64,000 bases of DNA from Heteronotia binoei. Taxonomy: Eukaryota. The DNA is taken from positions 62,496,001 through 62,560,000 of the forward strand of contig NC_083232.1 in NCBI RefSeq assembly GCF_032191835.1, written 5' to 3'. The notes under the pieces are model-generated. The model worked only from the letters and a program-made list of their open reading frames with translations. It had not been told where the DNA came from and searched no databases. Positions 11,086 through 53,321 of this stretch are shown here, piece by piece; position 1 is the first letter of the stretch; every line of letters starts with the position of its first letter. Position numbers and translations under genes: made by a program.

Positions 11086-12391
11086 GGAAGTACTCTATGA
11101 ATTCACATATTTGGGGAATTTATTATTGTATTTAGGGAATGTGTAAACTATAAACTTTAAGTGTGAGTTGAGGTCAAAGAGACTGGAAGAAAGAAAAAGG
11201 GTGACTATAAGCAAATGTAAATAAATGTACTCAAGATTCATAGCCCTTGGGGATGAGAACTAAAGGTTTAAGCCAAAGGAAGAAACAAGTTCTGAGAAAG
11301 GAATATACGATTAACCAGAAGATGTTAGGATTAGGGGATTTTCTTGGACCCTGGGCACCAAAGTGAACAATGAATGAGGGCAAAATTAAGTCCATGCTTC
11401 TGTCTCCACCTCTGAGAAATGTGGTGCCACTGTAGTACTGCCACTGCCCAAGGGAAGTATAAAAGAGTTCAGGAGAAAGGTGGATTAGGAAGCCTTTTTT
11501 TTTTTTTTAGCAGCCCTTTCTGTTTAGGGTCTACCTGCTTTGAGGATGGTGTGTCTTAAGGCTTCTGAAAACCTCTCATCAACCTGCCCTCTCTTTCTCC
11601 AAATTCTCAGGAGACTGAGGGTTGAGAACCCCACAAACCTATAAGGATACTGTCTCTTCAACCTTCCTGGATCTTTGGATCGATAACAACACATCAATTT
11701 CTTGCTAGGAAACTGAGGTAAAATTAGAAAAGCAGGTTGACGTTTAATGGTTTAATGTTTAAATTTAGATCGGCTGACATACATTAAGCTTGCTCTCATG
11801 CTTGCAACCTTTTCTTTCATGTACATTTACAATGCCTAGTAGCTTATGGTTCATGGCTCCACTACCTAACATGTCCTCTACTGGGGACTGGTTTAGAACC
11901 ACACTACAGACCAGTGGCGTAGCTAGGGCTTTGGGGGCCCGGGGCCCAAGATTTATGTGGGCCCCCCTATGTGTGTGCACGCCACCAGAAACAGGATATG
12001 ATGTCACTTCCGGTGATGTCACTTCCGCAGGATGGCCACCACTTGCGAAGGGCCTCCAAACCGGGGGATCTCCTGCCCCCACCTGGGGATTGGCAACCCT
12101 ATTTGGAAGACCCCACTGAAGCCCCCCCCTTTCCCAAACCCTCCAAAATCTCCCGACCTGGGCCAGTGGGGCGAACTGAGCTAGCCGGCCACTAGTTGAC
12201 CCTGGGCACTGGCATGGCCACGCGAGGCCGGCTAAACGAGGGCATCGCTATGAACAAATAACGGGGGGGACAGCGGGATGCAGCCAGCCCCGCTGCCGCT
12301 TCACTGCACCCAACTCTCACGCCGCCCGGCTCGGCGGAGCCGCTGATCTTGCGATATGCCGCAATATTCTCGGCCCGACTGGCTGGCTGAC

Positions 12392-12466
12392 CTTGCCGGA
12401 GGTGCCGTCGCCCAAAACCACGAACTTGAGCTGCCGGTCGGAGCACTCCTCCTCAGAGTCCGACAT
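12392..12466 (-). pseudogene. RAB28: Captured copy of RAB28 coding exon 1 ([25 protein letters not shown]) with intact GT donor; not the resident RAB28 gene
   Basis: Closely matches the recalled human RAB28 N-terminus ([25 protein letters not shown]). It is 75 nt followed by AAG|GTCAGC, lies inside a TIR/TSD-bounded element, and no RAB28 exon 2 was seen in 1-11900. Confidence 0.85.
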
Positions 12467-12750
12467 CGCCCGGCGGCCAGAAGGAGTCCCGCGCTCATTC
12501 ACTCCTCCTCACGGCGGCAACGGAAACAAAGTCGCCGCCGCCATCTTGCTTCCCCTTCGACCGCTCGCTATGGCAGCCGCTGGACGAGACCATGAGGCAG
12601 AACGGGGGGGGGGGAGACAGAAAAGGAAGGTGCCCAAGCCGACTCGGGGAGGGGGGAGCTGTACTGAGCGGACCAGGAACGGGCGGTGTAGCCGGTGAAA
12701 GAGTGAAATAGCGCAGCGGAGAAAAAGCGGGAATGAGATTCGGCTCCTTC
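12467..12750 (-). promoter_or_regulatory. Captured RAB28 5' UTR and CpG-island core promoter
   Basis: CpG-dense; canonical YY1 site AAGATGGCGGC on the minus strand at 12537-12547; GC-box-like runs upstream. Confidence 0.65.
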
Positions 12751-13247
12751 GGGACCCCCCTTGGCAATGCGGGGGCCCCCCAGACCCCCCAGACCTGGGG
12801 CGACCCGCCCCCCCCGCCCCCTCCCTACGCCACTGCTACAGATTCATGTTTTATTTGTTTATGCTTCTGCACTTCTTGTTTATGTATCTCATAGTTTTCC
12901 TTTCAGCTCCAGAAGCTTTACAAAATGGTATGACTGAGAGATAACAAAAAAAAGAGGGTAATACACTGGAGGAAAATATACAATGGAACAAGGAAGAATG
13001 AAATTGGCAGCCTGTCACTAAAGTACTGTAACGGTCAATCTCCAAGACGTAATTCCTAATCAAAATGGTTCTCAATACTGGAAAAATTAGAAGATACCCT
13101 TGAAAAAAAGGGTATTCATAACGGGACCAATACTACAATTTTTTTTGAAAACCAGCTGGTTAATCTAATTATAGATATTTAATTTAAAAGTTATGTTTAA
13201 GCATGTAACAGATATGTTACCTTTATATAGACTAAGACTGTGTTAAC

Positions 13248-13426
13248 CAGGGCTTTTTTGTAGCAGGAATTCCTTTGTATATTATGCCATGCCCTCCTGA
13301 TGTGCCAATTTTCCTGGAGCTTACAGTAGGCCCTGTACTAAGAGGCATGTAAGCTCTTGGAGGATTGGCTACATCAGGGGTGTGTGGCCTAATATGCAAA
13401 GGAGTTCCTGTTACAAAAAAGCCCTG
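13248..13426. mobile_element. hAT MITE, CAGGGCTTTTTT-TIR family (179 bp)
   Basis: cagggctttttt / aaaaaagccctg; TSD gtgttaac/gtattaac (7/8). Confidence 0.9.
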
Positions 13427-48577: not shown

Positions 48578-49134
48578 CAGGGGCGTAGCTAGGGCTTCGG
48601 GGGCCTGGGGCGCAAGATTTATGTGGGCCCCCCTATGTGTGTGGCGGAGGGGAGGGGCTTCCCTGCCTTAAGACGCTGAGCGGCGCGCGGCCCTCCCCAC
48701 ATCCCTTCGCCCCCGCAGCCTGCCTCACGCACGCCCGAAGTTCCTCTTTCTGGCGCACCGCCGCGGCCAGGAGCGGCTGAGTCGTCGGCGCCTGGGAGTT
48801 GAGGGGGCCGGAGAGCTCCGGGGTGCTGCTGCCGAGCGTGGGGATGCGGCCACTGGGTGTGCAATGCCACCGCCTCCTCCTCCTCCTGCTGCCCGCCGCC
48901 GCCTGCTGCTTCCTGCTGCTGCCCGCGGCACGTGGAGCAGCAGGAGAAGCCTCGAGCAGGCGAGGGTCGGACGCCGCTTCCCCCGCCCCGAGCTGGGACT
49001 GTGGCCGGAAGGTCTGCGCGATGCTCCGGAGCCCTGCCGGGGAGGGGAGGGACCCCCCTTGGCAATGCGTGGGCCCCCCAGATCCCCCAGACCTGGGGCG
49101 ATCCGCCCCCCCGCCCCCCCTCCCTACGCCACTG
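48578..49134. mobile_element. Pack-hAT element 2 (557 bp) with GC-rich first-exon-like cargo
   Basis: Same termini as 11912-12835 (left 62/66 identical; right ~85 bp highly similar); perfect TSD gctatagt (48570-48577, 49135-49142). Confidence 0.92.
48844..49011 (+). pseudogene. Putative captured first exon encoding a signal-peptide-like N-terminus (MRPLGVQCHRLLLLLLPAAACCFLLLPAARGAAGE...WDCGRK); donor gene unidentified
   Basis: gggATGc start; basic n-region, Leu-rich h-region and small-residue c-region; possible donor AAG|GTCTGC; CpG-rich upstream. Donor gene not recognised. Confidence 0.45.
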
Positions 49135-49220: not shown

Positions 49221-49355
49221 NNNNNNNNNNNNNNNNNNNNNNNNNNNNNNNNNNNNNNNNNNNNNNNNNNNNNNNNNNNNNNNNNNNNNNNNNNNNNNNN
49301 NNNNNNNNNNNNNNNNNNNNNNNNNNNNNNNNNNNNNNNNNNNNNNNNNNNNNNN
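49221..49355. other. Assembly gap (135 N)
   Basis: Run of n. Confidence 1.
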
Positions 49356-53178: not shown

Positions 53179-53321
53179 TGCATTGAAGTTGGGGAAGAGA
53201 TTTACAGCTGCCGCAGTATCCAGAGGAAATGGAAGAAAAGGTTTGATATCCAGCGATGGCTGCAAAGCTGGGGCTGGAGGACGTACCAGGGCTGGAAGAG
53301 CAGGACTCTGGCATGTACCTC
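53179..53321 (-). CDS. ZNF385D: Internal coding exon of zinc finger protein 385D (GGTCQSPALPALVRPPAPALQPSLDIKPFLPFPLDTAAAVNLFPNFNA)
   Basis: Near-identical to the recalled human ZNF385D N-terminal segment; pyrimidine tract plus ttcatatAG acceptor; GCA|GTAAGT donor; 143 nt, entering in phase 1 and leaving in phase 0. Confidence 0.93.

What the first reader, a model, noticed from the sequence alone, without database searches (positions are those of the whole stretch)
12392..12560. Possible in-frame RAB28-ZNF385D chimeric transcript from the captured promoter
Seen: the captured exon is on the same (minus) strand as ZNF385D, downstream of the 53179-53321 exon. It ends in phase 0 (75 nt), the same phase in which the ZNF385D exon ends (GCA|GT). 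Inference: if the captured promoter fires, its donor could splice to the next ZNF385D exon (recalled MDPIQKAV..., outside the window). That would replace the N-terminus with 25 RAB28 residues while keeping the downstream zinc fingers, and could give broad housekeeping-type expression.
Basis: inference. Interest (0 to 1): 0.72.

Follow-up and report, generated by a model that had tools for sequence, protein, structure and literature searches.

The report
Transposon-carried RAB28 first exon in ZNF385D
A small cut-and-paste transposon dropped a spare copy of the RAB28 gene's promoter and first exon into an intron of ZNF385D in a gecko genome. The copy could in principle make an in-frame fusion transcript, but nothing available shows that it does.

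Summary
On the minus strand, 12466..12392 encodes 25 RAB28 N-terminal residues and ends on a codon boundary. An intact AAG|GTCAG donor follows, identical to that of a distant orthologue. The ZNF385D-like exon 53321..53179 lies 40.7 kb upstream on the same strand and also ends in phase 0, so the frame arithmetic is right.

The exon sits in a 924-bp transposase-less hAT element (11912-12835, 8-bp target duplication). The element also carries at least 110 bp of conserved RAB28 proximal promoter and about 290 bp of intron 1. The cargo keeps CpG-island character (CpG o/e 0.85, against about 0.1 in the flanks).

Same strand plus same phase is a 1-in-6 coincidence. Only three small metatranscriptomes hold any of this stretch. 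One spliced contig covers the exon, but it carries parental-type letters (Pro9, as in the orthologue; the window has Ser9). Its 30 letters past the donor were not printed, so its partner exon is unknown.

The chimera is therefore possible but untested. I put it at about 0.2 for being detectable at all and well under 0.05 for mattering. Earlier notes of this scan report many similar Pack-hAT cargoes elsewhere in this genome. This is a new member of a known kind.

The parts
11904..11911 (.). Left target-site duplication, CTACAGAC
   Evidence: it abuts the left inverted repeat and matches 7 of 8 letters of the right copy.
11912..11977 (+). Left hAT end shared with the second element. The inverted repeat starts CAGTGGCGTAGC.
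   Evidence: 32-nt inverted arms at 11912-11943 and 12804-12835. The 12-mer occurs 4 times in the window against 0.08 expected.
11978..12048 (+). Subterminal region with two TGATGTCACTTCCG units. It is shared with other copies of the family but not with element B.
   Evidence: family D2; contigs with different flanks fit 11909-12048.
12049..12108 (.). Fragment of a very abundant dispersed repeat (SINE-like), truncated near 12101
   Evidence: summed contig depth is about 10^4. Other contigs join 12101 to 13254.
12109..12391 (-). Intron-1 side of the cargo, beginning with the GT donor at 12391-12390
   Evidence: GTCAG is identical to the orthologue's intron start. CpG o/e is 0.75. There is no significant similarity further into the L001 intron.
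12392..12466 (-). RAB28 exon-1 coding part: 25 codons, ending in phase 0
12467..12557 (-). RAB28 5' UTR. It holds a conserved AAGATGGCGGC motif (12547..12537), an upstream ATG at 12544 (11-codon uORF) and an out-of-frame ATG at 12498.
   Evidence: The mRNA contig starts at 12549.
12558..12750 (-). Captured RAB28 upstream region. The stretch 12670..12567 is significantly similar to the orthologous upstream region.
   Evidence: alignment score 28 against shuffle mean 12.7 (sd 1.9, maximum 20; 0 of 200 shuffles reach it). The aligned positions are collinear. CpG o/e is 0.90.
12751..12835 (+). Right hAT end shared with element B, ending ...CTACGCCACTG
12836..12843 (.). Right target-site duplication, CTACAGAT
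53179..53321 (-). Host-gene (ZNF385D-like) coding exon: AG acceptor, ends in phase 0, GTAAGT donor
48578..49134 (+). Second element of the same hAT family, with a perfect 8-bp duplication (GCTATAGT) and a different GC-rich cargo

Best explanation
The stretch is a genomic-DNA copy of the 5' end of RAB28. It comprises at least 110 bp (up to about 190 bp) of proximal promoter, the 5' UTR, 25 codons, an intact splice donor and about 290 bp of intron 1.

This copy is the cargo of a 924-bp non-autonomous hAT transposon, a Pack-hAT. The transposon inserted in sense orientation into a long ZNF385D intron.

A transcript starting here and spliced to the next ZNF385D coding exon would read RAB28(1-25) fused in frame to the rest of ZNF385D.

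That fit is most likely a coincidence of insertion (1 in 2 for strand, 1 in 3 for phase) and not a used gene structure. My reading is that the copy is a fairly young, structurally intact passenger. It is either silent or at most a weak extra start site, and any fusion message is a minor by-product without selected function.

Shown: the anatomy, the phases, the donor identity, the promoter conservation and the CpG retention. Inferred: everything about transcription and splicing at this locus.
For: Transposon structure: inverted ends at 11912-11943 and 12804-12835. The 8-bp duplication is CTACAGAC/CTACAGAT. A second family member with a perfect duplication shares only 66 + 85 bp of termini.

RAB28 cargo. 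No other RAB28 exon is in the window.

Copied as DNA, not from mRNA: the donor AAG|GTCAG and the upstream 105 bp match an orthologous genomic locus, L001.

Phases.

No sign of use: only 3 RNA runs hold 5-6% of the sampled words. No contig covers the transposon/flank joints, the intron part or the promoter. The single spliced contig (12549..12392, depth 7) differs from the window at 3 of 158 letters. At 12442 it has the letter that gives Pro9, as the distant orthologue has; the window has Ser9. No chimeric fragment of 27-86 aa turned up in the word search.

Published base rate: animal Pack-TIRs that are transcribed are mostly driven by the host promoter, as retained introns or UTRs (PMC8277862).
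Against: The cargo still looks like a working CpG island: GC 64%, CpG o/e 0.85 overall and 1.13 in the exon. The transposon ends are at 0.42-0.50 and the flanking intron at about 0.1.

Neither of the two listed differences from the spliced contig is a CpG-to-TpG/CpA change. That hints the copy has not been heavily methylated in the germline.

The donor scores as well as the host exon's own donor on a rough matrix (6.9 against 6.1 bits).

The spliced contig stops exactly 30 letters (k-1) past the donor. That is what a graph assembler gives when the next exon has two different upstream neighbours, and a ZNF385D exon reached from two first exons would behave so.

The RNA sample is tiny, of unknown tissue and possibly of another species, so absence means little.
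Confidence: 0.62

Rival explanations
1. Active alternative promoter. The captured CpG-island promoter fires in place. The RAB28 donor pairs with the next ZNF385D acceptor, and an in-frame RAB28(1-25)-ZNF385D message is made at a detectable level.
For: Same strand and phase 0 at both donors. The donor is intact and identical to the orthologue's. At least 105 bp of conserved promoter was captured. CpG content is retained. The spliced contig ends k-1 letters into a next exon that seems to have two upstream neighbours.
Against: No junction was seen. The one spliced contig has parental-type letters. At most about 190 bp of upstream sequence is carried. The cargo is wedged between transposon ends that are normal targets of silencing. 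An out-of-frame upstream ATG at 12498 runs through the exon. Frame and strand fit is a 1-in-6 chance.
Confidence: 0.2
2. The promoter is active but unproductive. Transcripts start in the cargo but stay unspliced, end early, or splice to cryptic acceptors in the remaining intron. The result is a non-coding or nonsense RNA.
For: The CpG-island features are the same as above. The next host exon lies more than 12.4 kb away and outside the window, which leaves room for cryptic sites.
Against: No contig covers the intron side 12110-12391 in any run. Nothing tested speaks for it directly.
Confidence: 0.12
3. Poison cassette exon. ZNF385D pre-mRNA reads through the element. A cryptic acceptor (AG at 12581-12580, behind a C/T-rich run) pairs with the RAB28 donor and inserts a 188-nt exon that hits a TAG after three codons.
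For: The sequence shows a pyrimidine-rich run followed by CAG upstream of the exon. 188 nt is not a multiple of 3.
Against: The pyrimidine share of the 20 nt before that AG is 0.75, below the 0.8 cut-off I used, so no candidate passed. There is no RNA evidence.
Confidence: 0.03
4. This is not a transposed copy but the true first exon of the RAB28 gene, lying here.
For: The exon, donor and promoter are all intact.
Against: The segment is exactly bounded by hAT inverted ends and an 8-bp duplication. No further RAB28 exon is in the remaining 12.4 kb downstream. A spliced RNA contig with slightly different, orthologue-like letters points to another, parental locus.
Confidence: 0.02

Closest known systems
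Pack-TIR / Pack-hAT elements of animals (Tan et al. 2021, Nat Commun, PMC8277862)
   Same: Non-autonomous hAT ends enclose a short piece of host genomic DNA that includes exon sequence, and the element sits in a host-gene intron. hAT is the commonest carrier in animals (208 of 370 elements). Thirty per cent or more are transcribed as chimeras with neighbouring genes.
   Different: The cargo here is about 700 bp, against a median of 224 bp. It is a whole proximal promoter plus first exon plus donor. The described animal chimeras are mostly driven by the host promoter (retained intron, UTR). In what I read of that paper, no case was reported of a captured promoter and first exon acting as an in-frame alternative 5' end. 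No transcription is shown for this element.
Pack-MULEs of plants
   Same: DNA transposons that pick up GC-rich 5' gene fragments and can form chimeric transcripts. This rests on my own knowledge and on the introduction of PMC8277862.
   Different: Different superfamily (Mutator, 9-11 bp duplications) and different kingdom. hAT features were met here.
Alternative first exons or promoters donated by transposable elements
   Same: This is the proposed way of working: a mobile promoter with a splice donor upstream of a host acceptor gives a new 5' end to a host message.
   Different: In the classic cases the promoter belongs to the transposon (LTR, L1 antisense promoter). Here it would be a captured host housekeeping promoter, and its use is unproven.

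Membership tests
hAT superfamily, non-autonomous element | 8-bp target-site duplication directly outside the ends | tested here: met
   Element A has CTACAGAC/CTACAGAT (7 of 8). Element B has GCTATAGT/GCTATAGT (8 of 8)..
hAT superfamily, non-autonomous element | Short terminal inverted repeats beginning CAG/TAG | tested here: met
   CAGTGGCGTAGC... at both ends, with 32-nt arms 75% complementary. That hAT ends start with CAG or TAG is from my own knowledge.
hAT superfamily, non-autonomous element | No transposase of its own, and a matching autonomous partner elsewhere | tested here: inconclusive
   At 924 bp, filled with RAB28 and repeat DNA, the element has no room for a transposase. An autonomous partner could not be searched for in this genome.
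Pack-TIR (gene-fragment-carrying TIR transposon) | Internal sequence copied from a host gene located elsewhere | tested here: inconclusive
   The cargo is RAB28 promoter, exon 1 and intron start by comparison with mouse protein and an orthologous locus. The parental locus of this genome could not be fetched. Its existence is implied by a spliced RNA contig with 3 different letters.
Pack-TIR (gene-fragment-carrying TIR transposon) | The same termini found with other or no cargo | tested here: met
   Element B shares only the 66-bp and 85-bp ends. RNA contigs carry the left end with other flanks.
Functional RAB28 gene | Complete Ras-like GTPase domain | tested here: not met
   Only residues 1-25 are present, ending inside the P-loop (GDGTSGK). 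No later exon is in the window.
Chimeric RAB28-ZNF385D transcript (alternative first exon) | Compatible strand and phase of donor and next acceptor | tested here: met
   Both donors are in phase 0 on the minus strand. The next acceptor is outside the window; phase 0 follows from the host's own frame.
Chimeric RAB28-ZNF385D transcript (alternative first exon) | Junction reads from 12392 to a ZNF385D exon that carry the copy-specific letters | tested here: inconclusive
   One spliced contig stops fitting at 12392, but it carries parental-type letters and its 30 further letters were not printed. No chimeric fragment appeared in the word search within its 27-86 aa length range.
Chimeric RAB28-ZNF385D transcript (alternative first exon) | Transcription start and open, unmethylated chromatin at the captured promoter | not testable with these tools
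   The only indirect hints are CpG o/e 0.85-1.13 in the cargo and no CpG-decay type among the two listed differences.

The most novel reading that the evidence does not exclude
A hAT transposon has moved a working housekeeping CpG-island promoter, with its first coding exon and donor, into ZNF385D. There it serves as an alternative 5' end and makes an in-frame RAB28(1-25)-ZNF385D protein with a new, broader expression pattern. It would be a vertebrate case of promoter-plus-first-exon shuffling by a DNA transposon. The many similar cargoes that earlier notes report in this gecko genome would make it a testable system.
Probability: 0.15. Interest if true: 0.6.

Novelty: new member of a known kind. 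Interest (0 to 1): 0.3.

Why it matters
If the captured promoter were active, this would be a clean vertebrate example of a DNA transposon rewiring a host gene by handing it another gene's promoter and first exon. Exon and promoter shuffling of this sort is well argued for plants but hardly documented in animals. As it stands, it is a well-preserved example of gene-fragment capture by hAT elements, with an untested and arithmetically lucky fusion potential. It is useful mainly as one locus in a family-wide test in this gecko. The 25 RAB28 residues end inside the P-loop and would add no GTPase function.

Tried and rejected
1. Real RAB28 gene at this place: rejected. The segment has hAT ends and a target duplication, and the window holds no other RAB28 exon.

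2. Retrocopy: rejected. The intron start and the upstream promoter are present.

I repeated it with the natural 49-aa unspliced ORF. It gave no chimeric fragment and no gecko parental fragment, so its silence says little.

4. Naming the host exon: the word search gave only unnamed read-through ORFs and the Atlas gave nothing. 'ZNF385D' therefore rests on recall.

5. Rfam on 11500-13400 gave only sub-threshold chance-level hits.

6. The literature search for this gecko's genome paper found none.

7. A cryptic-acceptor scan found no site above my cut-off.

8. The large HMMER search was not used: the operators called it costly, and the protein's identity was not open.

9. The parental RAB28 locus of this genome could not be reached with the collections on hand.

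The N run at 49221-49355 was left alone.

Full report
**What is at the coordinates**

Read on the minus strand, the window has an ATG at 12466. After it come 75 nt that translate to [25 protein letters not shown], then AAG|GTCAGC with the GT at 12391-12390.

- The best match among all solved structures is Rab-28, 13 of 15 residues identical.
- A word search with the natural unspliced 49-aa ORF (12466..12320) returned four proteins, all RAB28 exon-1 products. One is a mouse RAB28 partial isoform in which residue K25 is joined to a later part of the protein. That places the exon boundary where the GT stands here.
- Mouse residues 1-25 match at 88%, and no other RAB28 exon is in the window.

It runs 53321..53179 on the minus strand (143 nt), has an AG acceptor, and reads two letters plus 47 codons ending ...NLFPNFNA. 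It ends in phase 0 and is followed by GTAAGT. Read-through ORFs of the same exon from birds and other species stop matching at the same boundary.

No tool gave a name for this exon. I recognise it as ZNF385D from memory of the human protein, which is a lead and not a test. The next exon is not in the window.

**What carries the exon**

The GC-rich block (60-66% GC between about 11850 and 12900, against 32-45% beside it) is bounded exactly.

- It has inverted ends at 11912-11943 and 12804-12835 that begin CAGTGGCGTAGC.
- It has an 8-bp duplication, CTACAGAC/CTACAGAT.
- A second element at 48578-49134 has a perfect duplication (GCTATAGT). It shares only 66 bp at the left end and 85 bp at the right end with the first, and has an unrelated GC-rich interior.

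These are the marks of a non-autonomous hAT family whose members carry different cargo, that is, Pack-hAT.

RNA contigs with other flanks also carry the left end up to 12048. The stretch 12049-12108 is a piece of a very abundant dispersed repeat. The RAB28-derived cargo is therefore about 12102-12750.

**Copied as DNA, promoter included**

A Logan contig from a distant species (L001, which encodes P0002) aligns to 12557..12387 at 74%. It has the same donor AAG|GTCAG and the same AAGATGGCGGCG motif in the 5' UTR.

The 105 bp just upstream of the exon (12670..12567) aligns collinearly with the L001 upstream region. The score is 28, against a mean of 12.7 (sd 1.9, maximum 20) for 200 dinucleotide shuffles. 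The intron side shows no significant similarity.

The element therefore holds a conserved proximal promoter, the whole first exon, an ancestral-type donor and the start of intron 1. It is not a retrocopy.

**State of the copy**

| Part | CpG observed/expected |
|---|---|
| Exon | 1.13 |
| Upstream part | 0.90 |
| Intron side | 0.75 |
| Transposon ends | 0.42-0.50 |
| Repeat fragment | 0.18 |
| Flanking intron | 0.09-0.12 |

On a rough donor matrix typed from my own knowledge, the captured donor scores 6.9 bits, within the top 3% of GT sites on this strand. The host exon's donor scores 6.1 bits.

The 5' UTR has an 11-codon uORF starting at 12544. It also has an out-of-frame ATG at 12498 that stays open to the end of the exon. 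That ATG would compete with the RAB28 start.

**RNA evidence**

They are kept as contigs and hold 5-6% of the sampled words. Laid on 11500-13300, almost everything falls on the repeat fragment and on the transposon ends. No contig covers the transposon/flank joints, the intron side or the promoter.

One contig is informative: X1, 188 nt, depth 7.

- It fits 12549..12392 with three mismatches and stops fitting exactly at the donor. Thirty further letters do not match the local intron, so it is a spliced message.
- I read the orientation from another minus-strand record, whose loose end lies before its lower coordinate in the same table.
- Two differences were listed. One is 12487, in the 5' UTR. 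The other is 12442, which turns the window's Ser9 into Pro9.
- The distant orthologue L001 also has Pro there. The contig therefore carries the ancestral, parental-type letter and the window copy a derived one.
- The simplest reading is that the contig is ordinary RAB28 mRNA, of this or a close species.

Two small points lean the other way. Neither listed difference is of the CpG-decay type. The contig also ends exactly k-1 letters into the next exon, as happens when that exon has two upstream neighbours in the sample. Both an unspliced RAB28 precursor and a ZNF385D exon fed from two first exons would give this.

**How it most likely works**

Shown:
- a sense-oriented Pack-hAT insertion;
- an intact promoter-exon-donor cassette;
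- frame compatibility.

Inferred:
- any firing of the promoter;
- any splicing to ZNF385D.

Strand and phase agreement has a prior of 1 in 6, and the second element's cargo lies antisense. In the published survey of animal Pack-TIRs, hAT is the main carrier and 30% or more are transcribed as chimeras. The reconstructed cases are mostly driven by the host promoter, as retained introns or UTR pieces (PMC8277862).

My odds are:
- about 0.6 for a silent or functionally negligible passenger;
- about 0.2 for a detectable in-frame chimera;
- about 0.1 for unproductive transcripts;
- a few per cent for the remaining readings.

Even if it is made, the fusion would add only 25 residues that end inside the P-loop.

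**Comparison and novelty**

This is a member of the known Pack-TIR/Pack-hAT kind. It is notable for carrying a whole proximal promoter, first exon and donor. Earlier notes of this scan, which I did not check, report many such cargoes in this gecko genome: SMO, NOTUM, CHCHD3, CEP164 and TERT. The chimeric transcript proposed here is an untested corollary.

Noticed in passing
window 48578-49134: A second element of the same hAT family, with a perfect 8-bp duplication (GCTATAGT). Its 405-bp cargo is 74% GC. The + strand, antisense to the host gene, opens with an ATG followed by a leucine-rich, signal-peptide-like run and a GT.
   Followed up: partly
window 12049-12108 and 13208-13300: Pieces of one very abundant dispersed repeat, with summed contig depth around 10^4 in three RNA runs. 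Other contigs join 12101 directly to 13254. Weak mir-28/mir-3140-like hairpin hits at 13293-13382 are far below the Rfam thresholds.
   Followed up: partly
window 11978-12048: The left subterminal region has two TGATGTCACTTCCG units (on the minus strand, CCGGAAGTG, an ETS-like motif). Other copies that sit in RNA contigs at depth 50-850 share it, and some have an extra unit. Element B lacks it.
   Followed up: no
window 12498-12496 (minus strand) against L001 784-951: The upstream ATG in the RAB28 5' UTR is in frame with the main start in the distant orthologue, whose called protein starts there. It is out of frame in the gecko copy: 32 nt apart, against 33 nt.
   Followed up: partly
window 49221-49355: A run of 135 N just right of the second element.
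   Followed up: no
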